This document shows positions 14,150 through 43,338 of a stretch of DNA of 64,000 nucleotides, piece after piece. The stretch is from Saccostrea echinata (Eukaryota), in NCBI RefSeq assembly GCF_033153115.1, contig NW_026889750.1, positions 10,664,001 through 10,728,000 on the forward strand. The letters are read 5' to 3'. Under the pieces are notes generated by a model. The model did not search any database and was not told the origin of the DNA. It was given only the letters and a program-made list of their open reading frames with translations. The position numbers were made by a program, and so were the translations under genes. How positions within the stretch are numbered: the stretch's first letter is position 1; the number at the start of each line of letters is the position of its first letter.

Positions 14150-14900
14150 TGGTAAGTTGTGAAATATCACTTCATAACAAGATTGTTCGTCCATCTTAAA
14201 AAATTATATTCACGTATTTGAGATGATAATGTCAATAATAGGGTTTTCCTTCATATAACATTGAGCATTTAATATATCGCAATATTGTAATCTACATTGA
14301 TCATAAATTACAATATGTTTTTCATTTTCAATGAAAAGTTTGCAAGAATGACATACACGTTTTTCTCTAGGAATAGGTGTCCTTGAGTATCTCCCCATTT
14401 CAATATGTAGTGTATGAGCACTTATTCTTAGTTTTGTTAGGATTGTTCTTTCAGATTTCTCGTCGCGCAGTGGTTATCTAGAGCGTCTGCTCTAGAGTCC
14501 CGGAGTAAGGAGCTGATCCTTACGTCGAGGGTTCGAATCCAATGCGGGACGTGGAGACCGGTTTTCGGATGAGACCGTATAAACCGAGGTCCCGTGTCGC
14601 AGTAGGTGTTGGTACGAAACAGATTCTTCACTGCTCAATGGCACTAAGTGCCGAGTATAGTTATAAATTTGCAGCCCTACACCGGCAAGTGGTGGCGTCT
14701 CCATATGAGTGAAAAATTCTCGAGAGGGACGTTAAACAAACAATCTTTCAGATTACTTCAATGGTAATTGTAGGTAGTTCTGTTATTTATATTCATTCAA
14801 ATTTGTTATATTACTATAAAAAGTTAATTTTCCAGAATCTGATTTAGAAATGTTCTTTAATTGTTCACAAATTGTGTTACTATAATGCTCCTCTAATTTA
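14150..14900 (-). mobile_element. LINE (CR1/L2-group) ORF2 C-terminal remnant, split by the SINE
   Basis: Translates as KLTFYSN..NYLQLP / SERTILTKLRISAHTLHIEMGRYSRTPIPREKRVCHSC..ENEKH, the typical C-terminal LINE motif. Confidence 0.7.
14458..14743 (+). mobile_element. tRNA-derived SINE with V-domain
   Basis: A/B boxes, V-domain core GGATGAGACCGTATAAACCGAGGTCCC, (AAAC)n tail, TSD TCTTTCAGATT (14447-14457 and 14744-14754). Confidence 0.88.
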
Positions 14901-15719
14901 TATCTTAAAGTTTTATGTGGTATGTCCAATGAAAATAAAGACAATTTCTGTTGTAGAGTAAAAAGATTTCTTTGCCAAGATACTCTGGACCCAAATGTGT
15001 TTTATCTTCCTTTAATGCAGATACATTGTACCACTAATTGGTCATTATGCTCATTCTCTGACTCTGACTAAATATGTTTACATGTACATAGATGTTTTAC
15101 AGTCCCGTTGCACGCTGCTGTTGGACATGAACATGATAAAAACATCGGTATGGAAAGGGATTTATCCGTAAAACATCTACAAGCCTGTATCTATGCAGGG
15201 GTTAAAGTGCATGGAGCTGTACGGGCCATCTCAGGTACATTGAGAAAAAATATATCATTTATTAGAAAAAAAATTATCTCAGCATTGGATAATTAGTCGT
15301 AAGCATAGGTGGTTGGTTCCAGGATGGTGTATTATTTTTTAATGTATTTTTGCGTCTTATTGTGTCTGTCTGAATATAAAAATAAAAACAAGAAATCCCT
15401 GATATTTGCTATTTTAAAAAGAACATATAATGTACAATAAAAATATTCTAACAGGACACACTCGCCACCTTGGATTCTAGGGGGTACCTTGACTGACATT
15501 TGATTTAAATAAGTATCGATCAACGCTCTTCCTCCCGATGTGAGATGAGAACCAGCTACAAAGATGATTGAGTGACTTCTTTCTATCGTCTGCCGATTTG
15601 CAAATGCCCGTTTTGAACGTGCAGTAAACCAAAACATCCGCGGTGCGTAGCACATAAATCGAAAGTAACTTAACGGAAGTGATAATTTCCAACTATGTAA
15701 AAAGTAGAGGTGTCCCTGA

Positions 15720-16680
15720 ACATGACTAACAATGGCTTTGCTGGGTTTTTTTTCTTTTTTTCTTTTTTAAAGATTTTTCCCTATATATTCCTATGTAAAA
15801 CATTGATTGCCAATCGGGCCCCACCCTATCTCTGGGGATCATGATGTGAAGAAAATTGAATGAACACTATTGAGTATGCTTCCATATAAATATGATAAAT
15901 CACAGCTTTGCCGTTCTTGAGAAGTTGAATTTTGAATGATTTTTTTCTATATATTCTCCTATGTTAACATTTGATCGCGCATTGTGGCCTCACTTTACCG
16001 TCGGTGGTCATAATTTGAACAAATTTGAATCTATACTACCAAAGGATGTTTCCATATAAATTTGACTAACATTAGCTTCGCTGTTCTTGAGAAGTTTTTA
16101 AAGATTTTTCCCTACATGTTGCTAAATAAACGTTTGATCGCTCATTGTTGCCCCACCCTACCCCCTGGGTCATGATTTGATCAAACATGAATCTGAACTA
16201 CTTGAGGTTGTTTCCATTGAATATACTAATCATTGCTTCGCTGTTCTTGAGAATGGAAGATTTTTGAAGATTTTTCTTATATATTCCTATGTCAAACTTT
16301 GAACATTCATTGTGCCCCACCCTAACCCCGGGGCTCATGATCTGAACAATTTTGAATCTACACGATGTCAAGAAGCTTTTACTTACGTTTCATCTTTTCT
16401 GGCCCAGTTGCTCTTGAGAAGAAGATTCTAAATGATGTAATTAAATGTTTATTTAATTCTTAACTATCATCCCTTGAGAGAAGGCGTGGTCCTTCAATTG
16501 AACAGAATCACACCCCTTTTACCAAAGAATGCTTTGTGACACGTTTATGGGAATTGGCCCAGTGATTCAGGGGAAGAAATCAAAAATGTTTAAATTTAAC
16601 AGACAGACAAACTGCTGAAGGGTTGATGGAAAAAATCGATCAGAAAACCTCACTTGAGCCTTCGGCTTAGGTGAGCTAAT
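15720..16680 (+). mobile_element. 5'-truncated HINE with about 4 Cg170-like units
   Basis: Same 166-bp repeat as 33174-34744 and the same 3' end (CTTAGGTGAGCTAA). Confidence 0.75.
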
Positions 16681-16850
16681 AAGGGCTTGCATGAGTACTA
16701 GTAATCATTTGAAAGGCCTAAAATTTTCATAAATGAAGTTTGTTGGTGAAGAAATTTTAAAATACTAGTAATCATTTGAAAGGCCTAAAAATTGAAGTAT
16801 CCAAATAAGTGTTGCTGATTGATTTGAAGAAAGTTTATATCTCCTCTTAA

Positions 16851-16851
16851 T

Positions 16852-16884
<33 letters not shown>
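16851..16884. repeat. (GA)n microsatellite
   Basis: Seen directly in the sequence. Confidence 0.9.
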
Positions 16885-19613
16885 GGCCTACTGAGTGTTA
16901 TGGATATCGACGGTAAAACTTCTGTCCTAACTAAAATATCTTTTATTTTTAAATAACTGTAATACATTTAACTTAATGCTTCCGGTCATTATTTTATTTT
17001 TTTATTTACTAGATAGTTTATTTTTTACAGTGGGAATACCAGATTGGACCATGTGATGGCTTTATGGCAGGGGACCACCTGCAGATGTCACGCTACATAT
17101 TATTGAGACTTGCGGAACAGTGTGATCTGAGGGTCACTCTAAAAACAGCCCCTTCAAAAGGAAGGGCCGACTATTCCGCAGGATATTTGAACTTTAGTGT
17201 CAGAAAAATGAGAGAAAAAGAAGGAATATGGTTCGTTATTTGCATTGCATTTCTTTGAAAAAGGTTTCATTTCACAGTTGAAGAGATTGAATTTCAAACT
17301 TTTAAAGAAGTAATAACTATGACATTAATTTAACACATAACGAACTAGTCAATGAAGTAAACATTTCTTTTGTAAAATATTCATGAAGTTATTAATTCAC
17401 GGAATCTATTGTAATTTCAGATTTATCCATCATGCAATTAATATACTATCCAAATCTGACCAAAAGCCCCTATTAAAAAGTTACAACCAAACTATCGAAG
17501 AAGCTAATACAGAGAGACTTTCAAATAAGAAGGTAAAGGCACACCCCAGCATTGACGAATTTGTATTTGACGGTGCCAACAAAGCCATAACAACAGTCAG
17601 GATCCCTCCTCTAGTAGCCTGGGAGCGACGGGGATATATTTCAAGGGCATGAAAAACATCTCCGTTCAACAAAATGGCGTCCTGCTATATTTATTGGTTT
17701 ACTACATCAAATTTTAAAAAATGTTTCTAAAGTTTACACCTCCCTCCTCTGTAGACCCTTATGTTGCAGCAGCAGGCATGATCCAGGCATGTATATTTGG
17801 GGATTTCTTGAGGCCTGAAAACGAGTCTTTGAAAGATGTGTTTGTTTGGGATTAGGAGGCATCTGAGTTACATGAATTTCCTTACCCTTCATGAACAATA
17901 CCGCTTGCTTGCTATATCTACCTGAAACGAATATACATAATAAATAGACAGGAAGCAAATAATTTTAAACATCTTCCACTAATCAGTTCTGGACACAACA
18001 GGGCTCTCAGGAAACATATACACCACCATCAGCATTAGGATTGCAAGAATATACACAACTGTGTCTTTTACTAATTAACGATCTTTTGTCGGTGTGTACA
18101 TGACTAATTAATGAATCATGTGCGAAGTGACAATTTATTAATTAGCAAAACTCTATTAAGAACGTTCTTTCATTTTTTTTTAAATTCAATTTTATCTTCA
18201 ATATATTTGTTGTATTTAAATGAGATAAAATCATCCTTGCACACTTCATGTGCATGGAATCTGCTAACAGATAAAAAGCATTGACCTACTTATTGAATGT
18301 GGTTTAAAAAAATATCACTCATATCACTCACTGAAGGTGATTTTGGGGTTTAGAAAATATTGTCGTTAGCCCTATATAACGCTCCTATTTTGTTTCATAC
18401 TTCCGGATTCCAATTCATCAAGTAAATGCTTTAGTGGAGGCATGGAGTGGAGTTATGGAGTGGAATTTGGAGTGGAGTTTGGAGTCAAATTTTGGAGTCT
18501 GGTTTTTTTTTTTTTAAATTTGATTTTTGCTATAAAGCACCAGCTAATGCAATGTTTAACATAACTCCTGTTGCTAAATTTAGGTAATCTTGTTGAATTG
18601 CTTTAAAGTCTGCTGAAAAATAGACAAGTAATGTGTCTTGCTCTTTTTTAGGGGGTGTCATTTATTCTTGCTTGATACTCCATAATCCATTTCAAGTCTG
18701 CTCCTTTGGCCTGTGATTTTCCGATTGTTTAAGGAAATGTATTCTTTATTGCAATACCCCCCAAAAATAAGAGCTACTGAATTTGTGAGCTTTACATTGA
18801 TCAATCTTGGGTATGAGTATTATTAAATTTAAATTGTCTTATCGAATTATAGAATTTAAAAGATACAAATTCATCAGTTGGCAACTCTGGAGTTTTAATT
18901 TATCTCGTATTGCTATTGGAAGTGATGCCCGTGTTCCTTGGAACAGGGTAGATGAACATTTTAGTTTATATTTCTGTAGTTAAAAAAAAACACATTTGTA
19001 TTATGAAGTAAACTAGTGGTATGCAGTTTTTTAAATCTATATTTGAATTATTTGTTAATATCAATTTTGACGATGACATCATTTATAATAATTATTGATC
19101 AAATTTTTTTGTAACACCAATTAGAGTTTTTTTTTCACAACCAAATCTATATTATGAAAGACATTGTATCAATCATATTTGAAAGCTTATGTTCTACGAG
19201 TTTATGAAATTTATTTAACTCATTATTCATGACTGCCTTTCTTAATTTTTCATTGAAAATGGCAGTTTAAAATATGATTTTTCGTCTTATTTTCCTACAA
19301 ATTATGCCCCGAGACACCTTATTTGACCAAGCAATAGTTATAAAGCATCATAAAAGGGATTTATTTCTCAAATTTGAGAAATCTATAGGCTCCTTTCATT
19401 TACTAGATCTTGACCTTAAGATATGTTGATTGTTTTAACAAGCCAGGTGAAAATCCCATTATCTATTATCTAAATCTCAGGATTGTTATTATATTCATGT
19501 TATTTTTTATTTAGACAGGTTAATCTTCTGGTCCAACTCTTAAAAGCATTTTTTTCCTCAAAAAATGGATTACCCATAATTAGTGTACTTTTAATGAATA
19601 GCGTGAATAAATA

Positions 19614-26856: not shown

Positions 26857-27391
26857 ATGAGCTTCCATTTCCTCAATCCTCCAGCTACTCCAGGATCTAC
26901 AAAACGTGTTATTCTAGAGTACGTTTTCACAAATCAAACCAACTTCCAGTTCATGTCCAAGATGAAAGTGGTAAACACTGAACCAACGTCAGCAAAAGGT
27001 AAGAAAAAAATTAAATAGAATAATTTTTATAAACATAAAAGAATGAGGACGCATTTGATTGGATTCGGCAGGAATCTGGGTGCACTTAAAAAGTGAAAAA
27101 TTCATAGACACATTATGATACCGGTATATTGACATTCTACTGGGTTTCTGTGTATAAGAAAGAGAAATATATTCCCGATTGTGTGTTTTGACTTGAAACA
27201 TGGATAGACGCGTCATGTAGTACAAAATATTGCATTTTATAAACACGTTCTTATATATAACTTTTCTATATCTGGGTCATCTCTCTAAGATTTTAAAACG
27301 TTATTTGAGTCATTTTAACTCAAAAGAAACGCGCAAACATTTGTAAAAAGAAATGAAGAAAAGACCCAGAAACCCTACAATTGAACTTTTT

Positions 27392-27424
<33 letters not shown>

Positions 27425-28820
27425 TTGTGTAGCTGCGCTGCTTCATTGTCGTTGTAAAAACCTTTTTAGCATATTTCAACGATAGCACAGTGGTACATGA
27501 ATATTTTATCCGTCCATGACGATGAGAAATCGACGTTTTGGTTCGATCCTCGCATGGAACGTTTATATTTTTTATAAGCTCGAGTCGTTTGCCAGTTTGA
27601 TTTTATCTACTGATCTATCAAATTTTAGAATAACGTTACACTTTATTCTGTTGTACTGAGAACGAAAGTAATTCTTCCCACTCACTAAAATTTTAATACA
27701 TCTGCATTTCAATATGCCCTTTTATCTTCAGGCTGTTTATTAATTATGTGAAGTGGTACTAGGATACCGTAACTGTTAAAATAAGTAGACTTAATTTTTT
27801 TTTCGGGAGGGGGGGGGGTATTACAGTGGAATATACTATTTTCTTATGTGCGTCACTTTCGAAAAGTCTGCCCAGCTGTGGTCAGCCAATCAAATCGTCT
27901 GCTTGACTGAACATTTACACTATGAATGATTCGTTAACACGATTCTTGCAGATGACATGACAAATACGCCCCCATTTTCTTTTAAGAAAAGAATTTTTCA
28001 TCCAACTTAAACCATTTTTAGAGAGTCATCACAGTCTCAAAAAACATGTTTGATCATCCTGTTATTCTCCATTTCTATCCCTAGAATGTCCGTTAAATGA
28101 TACATACAACTGGAATGATGCAAATAGAAAAGAATTTACTGTAATGATCATGAAACCGGTAGCCATGTTTGAAAACCCGTTTTTAAGCAGTCCCCATAAG
28201 TTAGTTCTCTGTGACTTGTGGCTGACGATGGACAAACCAGCAGGTAAGAAATTAACAATTAGTGAGTATGTTGCATTTATATTACTTCATAGCAGTTACA
28301 TGAAACTGATAAACTTGTAAAAAAAAAAAAAATTATAGCTTGTGTGAACATCTTAAGGGAAAAAAATGATTTTCATATTATTATTTTTTTCTTCTAGATA
28401 TTAACACAAGGGTCAAATTAACAGAAACATTAAACAGACTACAATATGATCCGACAACAGGACACAGGCCGAAGGAGCCTCATGACCCGTGGTTTGGATT
28501 TGAACAAGAATATTACGTGGTAAATGATGACGGACTCCCGGTCAGCTACGACCCTATAAAATATGACTATTCTAGCCTTTGTATGTACCTCTATATATTC
28601 TAAAACTATAAAGAAATGAGTAAGCTGTTAAGTTTTGAAAAATGTAATTAATGACAATCTAAAACGAAAAAAAAAATCCTTAGAAAAAAATATGTATGTT
28701 TATACAAAAAAAATATAATGCTGACTGTCCTCCTTGAATTTTTTTCTTTTTCTTACTTTTATTAGTCCCCTACCGGTGAAACCGGAGGGGACTATAGGTT
28801 TCCTCTGAGTCTGTCCGTCC

Positions 28821-28858
<38 letters not shown>

Positions 28859-39894: not shown

Positions 39895-39932
<38 letters not shown>

Positions 39933-42305
39933 GGGGGACAGTACGGACTTTCCTCACTTCTGTAAAATTTTTGCCATAGATAGAATGAACAGTTTTCAAA
40001 TAAAATAAAGTAAAATCTGCTATTTTATATTGAAATTAGGGAACTCACTTTTATTAAATTTTGCCAGGATTAAAAATTGTTATAGTATCAAAATTAAGTG
40101 TTTCTGAAAGTGTTTTAAAGAAAGTTCATATCATTTCTTAATGAGACAGAGAGAGAACCTACAGAATTAATATTCATTAATCTATCAATTGATGTTTGGC
40201 AGTGGGAATACCAGGTTGGACCATGTGATGGCTTTACGATAGGGGACCACCTGCAGATGTCACGATACATATTATTGAGACTTGCAGAGCAGAGTGGACT
40301 GAGGGTCACTCTGAATACAGCTCCTTTAAAAAGAGGGACCGAATATTCCTCAGGACATTTGAACTTTAGTGTCAGAAAAATGAGAGAAAAAGAAGGAATA
40401 CGGTTCGTTATTTACATTGTATTTCTTTAAAAAAGGTGTAATTTTACAGTTAGATAGAATGGATTTTAAACAAGAGGCCCAAGGGCCTTAACGGTCACCT
40501 GAGTATAGTACAACAATTTAGAAGATCCATAGAGTATAAAATAAACTGACAGATGAAGTTTTGTTGCCCAAAAGCAAGAGAAATAGGATGATCAGAATCA
40601 ATGAAATAATTAGTCTAGTATTCAGTAACAACTCACATATTAAATTCTAATTTATCCCCCATTTAGCACTATCACCATGCAGACTATTAACAAACTAATA
40701 GTTCCTCTGTACTACTTTAAACCCCACATTGTGACCTCTCACACTGGCCTCTCTTGGTCTTTGAAGAACATTTAATAACTAAAGTTATTTTTGTCTCATT
40801 TTTATCTATTTATTATTTGTCTATCTGATCATTAAAACTATGAAAGTACTTTTTGTATTATTCAGTAATTTTTTTTTTTTTTTTTTGCATAATTCTCTTA
40901 TCCTATTAACTTTCAAATACATTATTTACAGTGATTAATTATCAAAAGTAAATGGCCAAGGGTTCCGAATAACTTCTCTCAGTTGAATACAAATTAATAG
41001 AGCCCTGACTAGGACCAGAAAACCTGACCAAATGGTCCTGATGTTTAAAAATCTGGTAAAAATATCCTTGCTTATTAAAACTTTAATTCTATTTGCCTTC
41101 AATATGCCAAGGAGCAGATTTTCAAAGAAATAATGCATTTTCACTACAGATTCAACACACCCCTACCCTAACACTAAAACCCATGTCCCAGGGTCATGAA
41201 ATTCATAAATTTGGTAGAGGTACCCTCACCATCATAACTATGCACTTAGCTGAAGATTTTCAAAGAATTAACAGATTTTCATTTTATTAATAAATATAGT
41301 CCCCCCCCCCCCCTGAAAAACATCAAAACCTGGAGACCACAAGTTTTAAAATTTTGTAAGAAGCACAATTGTTCATCATAACTATGCACTTTATTTATCT
41401 GCAACACTAAGGAGCAGAGGGGATTATTTAACAGAATTAATGCATTTTCACTATATTATCAATAGAGTCCCATCCTCACACCAGAACATCTGACTTAGAG
41501 GTCATGATTCATGAAGAAGCACTCTTGTTCAACATAACTACACACTTAGTTTACTTTATAACCAGGATCAGAAAAGATTTTCAAAGAATTAATGCTTTTT
41601 CACTATATAATCAATAGAGCCCCCCCCCCCCCAACACCAGAACCCCTGACCCAGGGGCCATGAATTTCACAATTTTGGAAAAGGCATCAATGCTTGTTAT
41701 AACCATGCACTTAGTTTGTTTGTATAATACTCAGGAGCAGAGAAGAAGATTTTGAAAGAATTAATGCATTTTCACTATGTAATCAATAGAGCCCCCCCCA
41801 CCACCACCACCACCAGAACCCCTGATCCAGGGGCCATGAATTTCACAATTTTGGAATAGGTATCAATGCTTGTCATAACCATGCACTTAGTTTGTTTGTA
41901 TAATACCCAGGAGCAGAGAAGAAGATTTTGAAAGAATTAATGCATTTTCACTATATAATCAATAGAACCCCGCCCTAGCACCAGAACCCCTGACTCTGGG
42001 GCCATGAATTTCATAATTTAAGTAGAGGGCCCAATGCTTATTACAATCATGCCAACAGTTTGACTGCTTGATGTCCAGGAGTAAAGAAGAAGATTTTTAA
42101 GGTTGCATCAATTTTGGTGGTTTTAGCCCCACCCCTGGTGCCCAAGGGGGGCAAAGACCATGAAATTCACAATTTGTGTTTCCCTTTACCCAAAGAAGCT
42201 ATATGCCAAAATTCGTTGAAATTCATTGAGCGGTTCTAGAGAAGGAGTTGAAAATGTTCAAAAGTTAACGCACGACGGACGACGCACGACGACGGACAAA
42301 AACGG

Positions 42306-42345
<40 letters not shown>

Positions 42346-42836
42346 GTGATAACTATGACACTAATATAACACATAACAAACAATAAAATATACATTTTGG
42401 TAAAATATTCATGAAGTTATTAATTCATTGAATCTACTATAATTTCAGATTTATCCATCATGCAATTAATATACTATCCAAATCTGACCAAAATCCCCTA
42501 TTAAAAATTTACGACCAAACTATTGAAGAAGCTAATACAACCAGACTTTCAAATAAGAAGGTAAAGGGACACCCCGTCATTGACGAATTTGTATTTGACG
42601 GAGCAGAAAAAGCCGTAACAACAGTCAGGATCCCTCCTTTAGTAACCTGGGAGCGACGGGGATATCTGGAGGATCGTAGACCTCCCTCCTCTGTGGACCC
42701 ATATGCTGCAGCAGCTGGCATGATCCAGGCATGTATATTTGGGGATTTCTTGAAGCCTGAAAACGAATCTTTGAAAGATTTGTCTGTTTGGGATAAAGAG
42801 GCATCTGAGTTAAATGAATTCCCTTACCCTTCATGA
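26857..42836 (+). CDS. Divergent type-II glutamine synthetase-like protein, intact, 402 aa, 6 coding exons
   Basis: GT-AG exons 26857-26998, 28085-28243, 28398-28580, 29590-29726, 40203-40402 and 42449-42836 sum to 1209 nt of open frame. GSII motifs present: KPVAMFENPF, PWFGFEQEY, HLQACIYAG, QWEYQVGPC, GDHL, GHLNFS, VRIP, GYLEDRRP. Intron phases 1,1,1,0,2 and the 200-nt fifth coding exon match vertebrate GLUL as I recall it. A probable non-coding first exon ends at 26218. Confidence 0.9.
28761..29256 (-). mobile_element. HINE-type non-autonomous element
   Basis: Subterminal IR TAGTCCCCTACCGG/CCGGTAGGGGACTA, terminal hairpin, (GTCT)n tract, two about 140-bp internal repeats, CTTGTT end. Absent from GS copy 1. 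Confidence 0.8.
29878..30613 (+). mobile_element. Degenerate HINE
   Basis: Head AACAAGAGGCCTGTGGGCC, decayed 166-bp units, tail GGCTCAGGTGAGCTAA. Confidence 0.75.
30709..31091 (+). mobile_element. Miniature non-autonomous LTR retrotransposon (TRIM) with tRNA-derived LTRs, Ajax/Cassandra-like
   Basis: Two 139-bp direct repeats (30709-30847, 30953-31091) with TGTCA..TGACA ends and 13 mismatches. PBS TGGCGCCAAACGT at 30850-30862 resembles the complement of the tRNA-Lys(CTT) 3' end. Purine-rich tract before LTR2. 4-bp TSD TGAA. Each LTR contains a tRNA-like cloverleaf with A and B boxes. Confidence 0.88.
30753..30825 (+). pseudogene. tRNA-like cloverleaf inside the 5' LTR (second copy at 30997-31069)
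   Basis: Acceptor GTCTCAG/TTGAGAT, D arm GCTC-AGTGGTTA-GAGC, anticodon stem CTGGC/GCCAG with loop ACAGAAC (no U33), T arm CTGGG-TTCGAGT-CCCGG, then a T5 run. Confidence 0.75.
32980..33173 (-). mobile_element. Older HINE fragment interrupted by the 33174-34744 HINE (continues about 35140-35330)
   Basis: Reverse-complement HINE tail sequence (GTCTGTAAACTTTTCACATT..GAAGGGCCAC) breaks off at the younger insertion. Confidence 0.55.
33174..34744 (+). mobile_element. Helentron-type HINE (CvA/pearl-like) carrying about 7 copies of a 166-bp Cg170-like satellite
   Basis: Head AACAAGAGGCCCATGGGCCACATCGCTCACCTGA; tandem about 166-bp units (CCCCATTGTGGCCCCACCCTACCCCCAGGGGTCATGATTTGAAC..); GACG/GACA microsatellite; 3' hairpin TGAGCTTTCAGCTCAGGTGAGCTAA. 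Confidence 0.88.
35561..36555 (-). mobile_element. HINE with Cg170-like repeats, reverse orientation
   Basis: TTTGGCTCACCTGAG end, reverse-complement 166-bp units, decayed head near 36525-36555. Confidence 0.75.
40469..42345 (+). mobile_element. HINE of a second family with about 176-bp internal tandem repeats
   Basis: Head AACAAGAGGCCCAAGGGCCTTAACGGTCACCTGAG; GACG tract; terminal palindrome AGGTCACCTGAGTGACTCAGGTGACCT. The homologous intron of GS copy 1 (about 17300) is an empty site. Confidence 0.85.
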
Positions 42837-43037
42837 ACAATACCCCTTTGTTCTACACGCAATGTAATAATATATATGCTGCTTTGTTTAATTTGATATT
42901 TGACATGTTATTCTGATTGTATATATTGATTCAACTTTGCAGAAATAGTGTTTAGAATTGCAAAGGTTTTGGAATTGAAGAAGAACGGTAGTTTGTAATC
43001 AATACTATATGAAATGCACAGTGTTAAAGCATGTATA

Positions 43038-43338
43038 TTTGTTTGTTTGTTGTTGTTTAACGTCCCTCTCCAGAATTTTTCACTCATATGGAGAGGCCAC
43101 CACTTGCCGGTGGAGAGCTGCAAATTTTGACCTATGCGTGGCAATCAGGGCCATTGAGCAGTGAGGGATCTTTTTCGTGCCAGCACCTACTGCGACACGG
43201 GACCTCGGTTTATACGGTCTCATCCGAAGGGCCGGTCTCCACGTCCCACAGTGGGATTCGAACCCGCGACGTAAGGATCAACTCCTTACTCCGCGACTCT
43301 AGCGCAAACGCTCTAACCACCTGCGCCACGCGGGCGAC
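43038..43338 (-). mobile_element. tRNA-derived SINE with V-domain
   Basis: Same family as 14458-14743. TSD TAAAGCATGTATA (43025-43037 and 43339-43351). Confidence 0.9.

What the first reader, a model, noticed from the sequence alone, without database searches (positions are those of the whole stretch)
26857..42836. Intact GS-II paralogue keeps metal and glutamate ligands but loses the ammonia site: candidate novel gamma-glutamyl-amine ligase
Seen (hand alignment, human GLUL numbering): E134/E136 (FEQEY), E196 (RENG), E203 (WEYQ), H253, E338/R340 (EDRRP), R299 and R324 are retained. The WNFDGSS loop (D63/S66) is replaced by NDTYNWND, the FHETS glutamate flap (E305) by basic SNKKVKGHP, WNGAG by TEYSS, and R319 by K. 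There is an insertion before PWFG and an acidic C-terminal extension. Known: bacterial GS-like enzymes with altered ammonia and flap residues (PuuA, GlnA3/GlnA4, gamma-glutamylmethylamide synthetase) glutamylate amines. Inference: a GLUL-derived animal enzyme that ligates glutamate to a larger amine, or a pseudoenzyme. The GLUL-type intron phases argue for an old gene duplication rather than lengsin (GSI) or horizontal transfer.
Basis: partly seen in the sequence, partly recalled or inferred. Interest (0 to 1): 0.8.

Follow-up and report, generated by a model that had tools for sequence, protein, structure and literature searches.

The report
Oyster glutamine-synthetase-like gene, rebuilt ammonia site
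This is an intact, transcribed oyster gene copied long ago from ordinary glutamine synthetase; it keeps all the metal, ATP and glutamate-binding residues but has replaced the ammonia-handling residues, so it probably joins glutamate to something other than ammonia, though nobody has tested this.

Summary
Window 26857-42836 (+) is a six-exon, 402-codon gene with GT/AG at every intron and no internal stop. The genome is Saccostrea echinata.

- **Active site.** Three independent alignments agree. All six metal ligands and N255, S257, R299, R324, Y336 and R340 (human numbering) are kept. R319 is K. D63 aligns to N or Y, and E305 to V or G.
- **Origin.** The five introns have the same positions and phases as in this genome's two canonical GLUL genes. 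That points to an old DNA-level duplication of GLUL, not lengsin and not gene transfer.
- **Not a lone gene.** The genome holds four intact paralogues, one broken copy (window 13257-17891) and some fragments.
- **Clade.** It has 100/99 support and occurs in oysters and mussels; a pearl-oyster fragment carries the same motifs. RefSeq labels members only "glutamine synthetase(-like)".
- **Constraint.** Pairwise dN/dS is 0.09-0.28, and this gene keeps 106 of 106 clade-invariant residues.
- **Expression.** A contig from one probable RNA run skips exactly intron 5.
- **Function.** Untested. My reading is an ATP-dependent gamma-glutamyl ligase with a non-ammonia acceptor (about 0.5), against an abundant pseudoenzyme (about 0.27).
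- **This subfamily.** So far seen only in Saccostrea, it changed the pocket a second time (W60 to N, flap Trp to Gly).

The scan had already flagged a paralogue elsewhere in this genome (s1-803110) with the same reading.

The parts
26857..26998 (+). Exon 1 (start codon, aa 1-47 plus 1 nt; ends phase 1). Canonical IWIDGTGEG is replaced by YVFTNQTNF.
   Evidence: The same N-terminus (MSFHF) is found in the RefSeq model of the upstream paralogue, P0046.
28085..28243 (+). Exon 2 (aa 48-100): beta-grasp domain with the rebuilt D63/S66 loop.
   Evidence: The intron position and phase match canonical GLUL.
28096..28119 (+). Codons for NDTYNWND, the loop that replaces WNFDGSS. D63 aligns to N56 or Y55, S66 to D59, W60 to N52.
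28398..28580 (+). Exon 3 (aa 101-161). It holds the roughly 11-aa insert before PWFG (28445-28486) and the metal ligands E136 and E138 (human E134, E136).
29590..29726 (+). Exon 4 (aa 162-207). It holds the Y162 position (F164/Y165), the clade-specific 4-aa insert GHEHD (29607-29621), and RENG carrying E202 (human E196).
29727..40202 (+). Intron 4, 10.5 kb, inflated by transposon insertions. The same intron is about 1.0-1.8 kb in the paralogues.
   Evidence: Exon coordinates. Mirrored ORFs lie at 31661-32217 and 38558-39114. Earlier notes s1-813452 and s1-813517 cover this stretch.
40203..40402 (+). Exon 5 (aa 208-273 plus 2 nt). It is 200 nt, exactly as in canonical GLUL. It holds WEYQ (E209, human E203), the rebuilt N248 loop at 40329-40358, and H259, N261 and S263.
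   Evidence: It is covered at 99-100% identity by contigs of run X1.
42449..42836 (+). Exon 6 (aa 274-402 plus the stop). It holds R306 (human R299), the flap, K328 (R319), R334 (R324), Y346, E348 and R350 (E338, R340), and the C-tail.
   Evidence: The X1 contig joint 40401->42448 (GT..AG, cut +1) equals intron 5.
42549..42575 (+). Codons for SNKKVKGHP, the lengthened, basic flap that lacks the E305 glutamate. His-Pro is conserved across the clade.
42738..42833 (+). C-terminal extension (aa 371-402). The core FGDFLKPxxExLKDLSxWDK is conserved in oysters and mussels and absent from canonical GS.
   Evidence: mean top-residue frequency 0.80.

Best explanation
The stretch is an intact, transcribed gene of Saccostrea echinata. 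It encodes a 402-aa protein with the glutamine-synthetase type II fold.

**Shown.**
- It belongs to a clade seen so far only in bivalves (oysters and mussels, with a pearl-oyster fragment, and possibly Solemya).
- The clade arose by DNA-level duplication of GLUL.
- The clade is held under purifying selection.

**Inferred mechanism.**
- The protein still binds two divalent metals, ATP and L-glutamate, and forms gamma-glutamyl phosphate as GS does.
- The acceptor site is built by the neighbouring subunit's D63 loop, the Y162 loop, the N248 loop and the E305 flap. It has been rebuilt with new conserved motifs: CPxWDxYMWN, G-H-x-H-D and W-H-P.
- The activated glutamyl group is therefore most likely passed to an acceptor other than free ammonia, probably an organic amine or amino-sulfonate/amino acid. 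The product would be a gamma-glutamyl amide.
- This gene's own subfamily (sub1) changed the same pocket again: W60 to N, flap Trp to Gly, a Lys-rich flap, and an acidic residue at N248. That suggests a different acceptor from its sister paralogues.
For: **Gene and fold.**
- The gene model is intact with canonical splice sites.
- An AF2 model of the 91.6%-identical paralogue P0046 has pLDDT 91.9 and pTM 0.92. Its best fold matches are human and rat GS, with TM 0.76-0.89.

**Active site.**
- E134, E136, E196, E203, H253, E338, N255, S257, R299, R324, Y336 and R340 are invariant in all clade members aligned. Among themselves those members are only 51-84% identical, and 32-37% identical to canonical GS.
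- R319 is K in all of them.
- D63 and E305 are invariant in 32 canonical GS and absent from every clade member.
- The rebuilt loops carry new clade-invariant or near-invariant residues: C49, P50, G168, H171, H315, P316 and K328. The C-tail is well conserved.

**Origin and constraint.**
- The five intron positions and phases equal those of canonical GLUL.
- The clade has 100/99 support.
- dN/dS: A against the upstream paralogue 0.28 (CI 0.16-0.45), the C75 pair 0.11, between subfamilies about 0.09.
- Gene A keeps 106 of 106 invariant and 39 of 40 near-invariant clade residues. Its derived changes are balanced against its sister's, 11 to 12.

**Expression.**
- A contig of run X1 skips exactly intron 5. 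In that run, the non-repeat sequence covered is the two exons, at 99-100% identity; the nearest paralogue is only 91.5-94% identical there.
- Orthologues occur as about 1.4-1.8 kb intronless contigs holding the full ORF, which means spliced transcripts.

**Precedent.**
- Bacterial GS-like enzymes with conserved ATP and glutamate sites glutamylate amines (PMC9826267).
- An ATP-dependent gamma-glutamyl-histamine synthetase activity is on record in a mollusc (EC 6.3.2.18, table in PMC9547800).

**Second remodelling in this subfamily.** Of 12 substitution columns fixed in sub1 against the rest of the clade, two are the acceptor-loop positions W60 and the flap Trp.
Against: - No activity, product or substrate was measured.
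- No residue-level structural superposition was possible, because the tools return no coordinates. What sits at the D63 and E305 positions therefore rests on sequence alignment in loops that carry indels.
- The rebuilt loops are somewhat less conserved (0.59-0.69) than the protein as a whole (0.73). Partial relaxation would also produce that.
- Asp59 at the S66 column and Glu254 at the N248 column could still supply an acidic group, so residual ammonia chemistry is not excluded.
- A clade member (K1PQ62) is reported among the ten most abundant proteins of a pearl-oyster extract (PMC10792636). That recalls structural pseudoenzymes such as lengsin.
- dN/dS is pairwise between paralogues, and the broken copy M gives a similar value (0.25). 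It therefore does not isolate constraint on this gene's own branch.
- The RNA evidence is one run whose RNA status is the tool's guess, and only one intron was tested.
Confidence: 0.5

Rival explanations
1. It is a pseudoenzyme: a GS-fold protein kept for a non-catalytic role as an abundant structural, scaffolding, nucleotide- or glutamate-binding, or regulatory protein. This would parallel lengsin in the vertebrate lens.
For: - Both residues that handle ammonia and the tetrahedral intermediate (D63, E305) are gone in the whole clade.
- The Pfam beta-grasp model no longer matches.
- K1PQ62, a clade member, is listed among the top-10 most abundant proteins of a Pinctada extract (PMC10792636).
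- The rebuilt loops are a little less conserved than the rest of the protein.
- The copy number is fluid, with one broken copy plus fragments.
Against: - All six metal ligands and six ATP, phosphate or glutamate ligands are invariant across mussels and oysters, on a background of about 50% identity. A purely structural role does not predict that.
- New invariant residues appear inside the remodelled loops.
- The abundance report rests on cross-species peptide matching, and I did not check it.
Confidence: 0.27
2. It is still a glutamine synthetase, using another base (for example Asp59 or Glu254) in place of D63 and E305. That would make it a third and fourth GS isoform.
For: - Asp59 aligns with S66 in all three alignments, and Glu254 with N248.
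- Everything needed for the first half-reaction is kept.
Against: - D63, S66, N248, G249 and E305 are invariant in all 32 canonical animal GS aligned. All differ here.
- The acidic residues at the S66 and N248 columns are not conserved across the clade: N or S, and F, in the sister subfamily.
- The genome already has two canonical GLUL genes.
- The clade's stem is very long.
Confidence: 0.08
3. It uses GS-fold chemistry on something else. Examples are glutamate activation ending in 5-oxoproline, a different carboxylate substrate, or protein modification.
For: - N248 and G249, which contact the substrate in GS by established knowledge of the family, are replaced.
- The flap that shields the acyl-phosphate is lengthened.
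Against: R299, which holds the glutamate alpha-carboxylate, and the whole metal and ATP set are invariant. Nothing here points to a specific alternative.
Confidence: 0.12
4. This particular copy is a young, decaying duplicate that is transcribed but no longer useful.
For: - Intron 4 has been inflated to 10.5 kb by transposons.
- A neighbouring copy, M, is already broken.
- The gene itself was not recovered as a database protein.
Against: - The 402-codon frame is open and all splice sites are canonical.
- It keeps 106 of 106 clade-invariant residues and shows no excess of derived changes.
- dN/dS against its sister is 0.28.
- Intron 5 is correctly spliced.
Confidence: 0.03

Closest known systems
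Animal glutamine synthetase type II (GLUL; human structures 2QC8/2OJW, 8DNU; the two canonical GLUL genes of this genome on contig C4)
   Same: - Same fold (TM 0.76-0.89).
- The same five intron positions and phases, including an identical 200-nt exon 5.
- Identical metal ligands and ATP, phosphate and glutamate ligands.
- No obvious N-terminal signal peptide by eye, so probably cytosolic (not tested).
   Different: - Only 32-37% identity.
- D63, S66, N248, G249 and E305 are replaced, and R319 is K.
- Inserts: about 11 aa before PWFG, 4 aa after G166, 2-3 aa in the flap and 1 aa after K328.
- A conserved C-terminal extension of about 29 aa.
- The Pfam Gln-synt_N model no longer matches.
Bacterial GS-like gamma-glutamyl-amine ligases (PuuA, GlnA3, GlnA4, GmaS)
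   Same: The logic is the same: the ATP and glutamate sites are conserved and the acceptor site is altered. Such enzymes glutamylate amines (PMC9826267).
   Different: - Those are GSI-type dodecamers of independent origin.
- No sequence-level membership: the NCBIfam GGputSyn model gives no hit and GlnII is the best model.
- Activity is shown there and not shown here.
Lengsin (LGSN), the vertebrate lens GS-like pseudoenzyme
   Same: An animal GS-superfamily paralogue without ordinary GS residues. It may likewise be very abundant in some tissue.
   Different: Lengsin is GSI-derived. This clade is GSII/GLUL-derived, as shown by gene structure, best matches and the tree, and it keeps the full metal and ATP set.
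Other bivalve 'glutamine synthetase-like' RefSeq models (S. echinata P0046, S. cucullata P0047 and P0044, Ostrea edulis P0001, Magallana gigas P0183 and K1PQ62, Crassostrea virginica P0052, Mytilus P0048 and P0049)
   Same: The same clade, exon plan, rebuilt pocket and C-tail. P0046 is the upstream tandem paralogue (91.6% identical).
   Different: Together with P0046 and P0047, this gene forms a subfamily seen so far only in Saccostrea. It has W60 to N, the flap Trp to Gly, a Lys-rich flap, and a further 8 to 12-residue tail ending in ...EFPYPS.
gamma-Glutamylhistamine synthetase activity of Aplysia (EC 6.3.2.18)
   Same: A molluscan ATP- and glutamate-dependent ligation of an amine. That is the chemistry proposed here.
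   Different: It was described in a gastropod. I found only canonical GS among the gastropod hits. That the activity has no assigned gene is my recollection, not a tool result. The link is a lead only.

Membership tests
Glutamine synthetase type II (GLUL, EC 6.3.1.2) | GS fold: an N-terminal beta-grasp domain plus a catalytic domain | tested here: met
   - The AF2 model of paralogue P0046 has pLDDT 91.9.
- Foldseek's top hits are human and rat GS, at E about 1e-35 and TM 0.76-0.89.
- Pfam Gln-synt_C scores 36.4 bits against a cut-off of 24.
Glutamine synthetase type II (GLUL, EC 6.3.1.2) | Pfam Gln-synt_N (beta-grasp) sequence signature | tested here: not met
   P0046 and P0044 give no hit at E<=0.1. 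A canonical bivalve GS scores 43.9 bits against a cut-off of 33.4.
Glutamine synthetase type II (GLUL, EC 6.3.1.2) | Two-metal site: E134, E136, E196, E203, H253, E338 | tested here: met
   All six are present in the gene (E136, E138, E202, E209, H259, E348) and in every clade member.
Glutamine synthetase type II (GLUL, EC 6.3.1.2) | ATP, phosphate and glutamate ligands: N255, S257, R299, R319, R324, Y336, R340 | tested here: met
   All are kept except R319, which is Lys in the whole clade.
Glutamine synthetase type II (GLUL, EC 6.3.1.2) | Ammonium site and catalytic flap: D63, S66, (Y162), N248/G249, E305 | tested here: not met
   D63 aligns to N or Y, S66 to D, N248/G249 to E/Y, and E305 to V or G. 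These residues are invariant in 32 canonical GS.
Glutamine synthetase type II (GLUL, EC 6.3.1.2) | GLUL gene structure (common descent) | tested here: met
   Five introns with phases 1,1,1,0,2 sit at homologous positions in this gene, its paralogues and both canonical GLUL genes of the genome.
Glutamine synthetase type II (GLUL, EC 6.3.1.2) | Makes glutamine from glutamate, ATP and NH4+ | not testable with these tools
   Needs an enzyme assay.
GS-like gamma-glutamyl-amine ligases (PuuA, GlnA3, GlnA4, GmaS) | ATP and glutamate sites conserved, ammonium site altered | tested here: met
   This is a resemblance in logic, not shared descent.
GS-like gamma-glutamyl-amine ligases (PuuA, GlnA3, GlnA4, GmaS) | Sequence membership (GSI-type; for example NCBIfam GGputSyn NF045547) | tested here: not met
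   P0046 and P0044 hit GlnII best (152-181 bits) and do not hit GGputSyn.
GS-like gamma-glutamyl-amine ligases (PuuA, GlnA3, GlnA4, GmaS) | Demonstrated glutamylation of an amine | not testable with these tools
   Needs an assay with an amine panel and LC-MS.
Lengsin (GSI-derived pseudoenzyme) | GSI-type sequence and descent | tested here: not met
   The best PDB matches are all GSII; GSI chains score E about 0.9 on exon 6. The gene structure is GLUL-type.

The most novel reading that the evidence does not exclude
The bivalve GS-like clade is the first GLUL-derived (GSII) family of animal gamma-glutamyl ligases. Its paralogues would have diverged in acceptor specificity. The aromatic pocket of the widespread subfamily might suit monoamines, and the Lys-rich, polar pocket of this Saccostrea subfamily might suit an anionic amine such as taurine. 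That would give molluscan gamma-glutamyl-amine synthetase activities a gene family.
Probability: 0.25. Interest if true: 0.8.

Novelty: new variant of a known kind. Interest (0 to 1): 0.6.

Why it matters
- Animals are thought to have one working GS lineage (GLUL) plus the inactive lengsin.
- A conserved, expressed, multi-copy GLUL offshoot that keeps the ATP, metal and glutamate machinery but rebuilds the ammonia site would be a new branch of animal nitrogen or amine metabolism.
- Oysters and mussels hold very large free amino-acid and taurine pools and rely on amine transmitters, so such a branch is plausible there.
- The family is currently hidden under the automatic name "glutamine synthetase(-like)". 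That name can mislead transcriptome and proteome studies that read it as ammonia detoxification.
- The hypothesis is directly testable with a recombinant protein and an amine panel.

Tried and rejected
- **Pfam on single exons.** Almost nothing matched, because the pieces are too short. I used PDB phmmer per exon instead.
- **The window's own protein in the databases.** I did not find it. P0046 turned out to be the upstream paralogue, 91.6% identical, and served as a stand-in for folding and family scans.
- **P0009, a divergent GS from the big search.** I followed it as a possible molluscan relative. Its kin are mite and other arthropod GS, so I dropped it.
- **Solemya velum P0008 and P0300.** They join the clade's base with 100/100 support, but on a very long branch, and they are no more identical to the clade than to canonical GS. 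I left the link as "possible".
- **Link to Aplysia gamma-glutamylhistamine synthetase.** Kept only as a lead, because no clade member turned up in gastropods.
- **Review PMC9397018.** Searched for residue-level statements on the ammonium sites of GS-like enzymes and found none.
- **dN/dS of the broken copy M as a neutral control.** It gave 0.25, not about 1, so the breakage is recent and the contrast is uninformative.
- **The look-up of encoding contigs for S. cucullata DNA** (for a branch-specific test).
- **Literature searches** for the clade by accession, species and gene-family terms. No study of it turned up.

Full report
**What is in the sequence.** Three-frame translation of the + strand between 26.5 and 43.3 kb shows six open segments that read like glutamine synthetase. 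Reading the boundaries gives the following model.

| Exon | Coordinates |
|---|---|
| E1 | 26857-26998 |
| E2 | 28085-28243 |
| E3 | 28398-28580 |
| E4 | 29590-29726 |
| E5 | 40203-40402 |
| E6 | 42449-42836 |

- Every intron is GT..AG, the phases are 1,1,1,0,2, and the total is 1209 nt, or 402 codons plus a stop.
- The quoted motifs translate as stated: NDTYNWND, KRGTEYSSGH and SNKKVKGHP.

- Exons were searched one by one, by reference.
- The joined model was used only inside scripts, for alignment, the tree and dN/dS.
- The step "search or fold the joined protein of this very gene" was left out.
- For folding and family scans I used P0046. It is the RefSeq protein of the upstream tandem paralogue, 91.6% identical, the same length and with the same motifs.

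**Homology and residues.** Each exon finds vertebrate GS-II chains as its best solved relatives. Full-length P0046 matches them at 1e-55 to 1e-57. Three alignment methods agree: HMMER pairwise, MAFFT of 38 sequences, and hhalign of a 13-sequence clade profile against a 32-sequence canonical profile.

| Human residue(s) | State in this gene |
|---|---|
| E134, E136, E196, E203, H253, E338 (metals) | kept |
| N255, S257, R299, R324, Y336, R340 | kept |
| R319 | Lys |
| E305 | V312 or G314, inside a flap 2-3 residues longer |
| D63 | N56 or Y55 |
| S66 | D59 |
| N248 / G249 | E254 / Y255 |

I add four things.
- An Asp sits three residues downstream of the D63 column.
- A Glu sits at the N248 column.
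- A further insert, G-H-E-H-D, follows G166.
- In 32 canonical animal GS, D63, S66, N248, G249 and E305 are all invariant.

**Fold.** AlphaFold2 on P0046 with a 116-sequence alignment gives pLDDT 91.9 and pTM 0.92. Foldseek puts human, rat, bovine and dog GS on top, with TM 0.76-0.89. The tools return no coordinates. The requested residue-level superposition at D63 and E305 could therefore not be done and remains open.

**Origin.**
- A search of the window's own genome with exon 5 finds seven loci.
- The organism is Saccostrea echinata. P0046 is named so, and it lies on a contig of 53,466,550 bases, which is the length of G000:C1.
- Two loci on contig C4 are canonical GLUL genes. Their exon lengths are 157/160, 162, 147, 128, 200 and 292/286, with phases 1,1,1,0,2.
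- The divergent genes have exon lengths 142/154, 159/165, 183, 137, 200 and 388/370, with the same phases and homologous intron positions.
- This is a DNA-level duplicate of GLUL. It is not a retrocopy, not lengsin (GSI) and not a transfer.

**A family, not a singleton.** Local tblastn and splice modelling give the following.
- Four intact 402-aa paralogues:
  - U, about 6.5 kb upstream of the window; this is P0046.
  - A, this finding.
  - Two on contig C75, about 67% identical to A.
- A broken copy, M, inside this window at 13257-17891. The end of exon 4 that carries E196 is missing, H253 has become Tyr, about 100 nt are inserted with a frame change across EDRR, and there is an in-frame stop.
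- Loose fragments between U and M.

**Distribution.**
- Database relatives of the same type occur in Ostrea edulis, S. cucullata, Magallana gigas and angulata, Crassostrea virginica, Mytilus coruscus and M. californianus. A Pinctada fragment also belongs.
- All are named only "glutamine synthetase(-like)".
- In a maximum-likelihood tree the clade is monophyletic (100/99) on a very long stem. It sits next to molluscan GLUL with weak support (81/73).
- Two Solemya velum genes attach at its base (100/100), but on a long branch and without higher identity. An origin before the protobranch split is possible, not shown.
- Heterodont clams, a unionid, a scallop and gastropods gave only canonical GS among the hits. 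That is not proof of absence.
- Independent divergent GS-II paralogues also exist in ticks and mites.

**Is it functional?**
- Nei-Gojobori dN/dS:
  - A against U: 0.28 (CI 0.16-0.45).
  - The two C75 copies: 0.11.
  - Between subfamilies: about 0.09, with dS saturated.
- Gene A keeps all 106 clade-invariant and 39 of 40 near-invariant residues. It has as many derived amino-acid changes as its sister, 11 against 12.
- Caveat: the broken copy M gives 0.25 against U. Pairwise values therefore mostly reflect shared history.

**Expression.**
- One run, X1, has a contig that joins 40401 to 42448 with GT..AG ends. That is exactly intron 5. The tool only guesses that this run is RNA.
- X1 contigs cover exons 5 and 6 with 0-1 differences per roughly 200 nt. 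Non-repeat intron bins are empty.
- The nearest paralogue is only 91.5-94% identical in those exons, so the contigs come from this gene.
- A 251-nt contig ends its match at the exon 5 acceptor with 64 further letters that do not lie on the laid stretch. That fits splicing to exon 4, but I could not read them.
- Only one read-laying run of at most 6 kb was allowed, so introns 1-4 were not tested.
- Orthologues appear as 1.4-1.8 kb intronless contigs holding the full ORF.

**Mechanism.** The part of GS that binds two metals, ATP and glutamate and makes gamma-glutamyl phosphate is untouched across the oyster-mussel split. The part that binds and deprotonates ammonium and closes over the intermediate is replaced.
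- The replacement is not random decay. The loops carry new clade-wide residues: C-P-x-W-D-x-Y-M-W-N, G168, H171, W-H315-P316 and K328. The 20-residue C-tail core is among the best conserved stretches.
- The loops are nevertheless slightly less conserved than the average (0.59-0.69 against 0.73).
- By analogy with bacterial GS-like enzymes that keep the ATP and glutamate sites and glutamylate amines (PMC9826267), the most likely reading is an ATP-dependent gamma-glutamyl ligase for a non-ammonia acceptor. I put this at about 0.5.
- In this gene's subfamily (A, U and S. cucullata P0047), two of the 12 substitution columns fixed against the rest of the clade are acceptor-loop positions: W60 to N and the flap Trp to Gly. 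That subfamily also has a Lys-rich flap and an acidic residue at N248. This fits a further shift of acceptor. Naming taurine or another anionic amine is speculation.

**Rivals.**
- Pseudoenzyme, about 0.27. K1PQ62, which I confirmed to be a clade member, is listed among the ten most abundant proteins of a pearl-oyster extract (PMC10792636).
- Other GS-fold chemistry, about 0.12.
- Residual GS activity through Asp59 or Glu254, about 0.08.
- A decaying copy, about 0.03.
- The recorded Aplysia gamma-glutamylhistamine synthetase activity (EC 6.3.2.18, PMC9547800) shows that such chemistry exists in molluscs. I found no clade member in gastropods.

**Novelty.** I found no paper on this clade. The genes exist in RefSeq only under an automatic name. 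The scan itself had already flagged a paralogue on another piece of this genome, with the same conclusion (s1-803110). My results on this copy agree, and they add the second remodelling specific to this subfamily, the broken neighbour and the intron-5 splice evidence. Classification: a new variant of a known kind (a GS-superfamily offshoot with an altered acceptor site, here GSII-derived and animal), with function unproven.

- The single read-laying run covered only exons 5-6.
- No residue-level structure superposition was possible.

Noticed in passing
window 13257-17891 (+): A broken tandem paralogue of the same GS-like gene. Exons 1-3 are intact. The end of exon 4 (RENGPSQ, carrying E196) is lost and H253 has become Tyr. 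About 100 nt are inserted with a frame change across the EDRR motif, and there is an in-frame stop in the C-tail. dN/dS against the intact upstream copy is still 0.25, so the breakage looks recent.
   Followed up: yes
G000:C1:10652419-10657450 (upstream of the window; loci L009/L010) and C1:10658272-10660936: An intact paralogue U (equal to RefSeq P0046) lies about 6.5 kb upstream of the window and spans only 5 kb. Loose fragments of another copy (aa 352-402, 1-46 and 43-84) follow it. The locus is a tandem array in flux.
   Followed up: partly
G000:C75:1218242-1221411 and 1241954-1245708 (loci L012-L015): Two further intact 402-aa paralogues, 97% identical to each other at the nucleotide level (dN/dS 0.11). 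They belong to the widespread oyster subfamily with the aromatic pocket (W60 kept, F/F at N248/G249, flap SGHWHP).
   Followed up: yes
window 29727-40202: Intron 4 of the gene is 10.5 kb, against about 1.0-1.8 kb in the paralogues. It holds near-identical ORFs in mirror orientation at 31661-32217 and 38558-39114, which indicates a large inverted-repeat transposon. It also holds tRNA-like SINE pieces near 30700-31100. Earlier notes s1-813517 and s1-813452 cover these.
   Followed up: no
window 28700-28940 (intron 3): A short-period tandem repeat. It reads as QTDR/SVCL repeats in several frames.
   Followed up: no
window 40433-40543, 41543-42430 and 42986-43318: Contig depth in runs X1 and X3-X5 is in the hundreds to thousands. 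These are highly repeated elements in intron 5 and just downstream of the gene. The downstream one translates to tRNA-like GFEP motifs, as SINEs do.
   Followed up: no
proteins P0054 (Rhipicephalus), P0057 (Oppiella), P0009/P0192 (mite-like): Ticks and mites also carry divergent GS-II paralogues, some as tandem two-domain models. They lack D63 and E305 and partly have K at R319. They appear independent of the bivalve clade.
   Followed up: partly
G000:C4:2879824-2882915 and 2913117-2921716 (minus strand): The genome has two canonical GLUL genes about 30 kb apart. They are 73% identical at the nucleotide level, and all catalytic residues are intact in both.
   Followed up: yes
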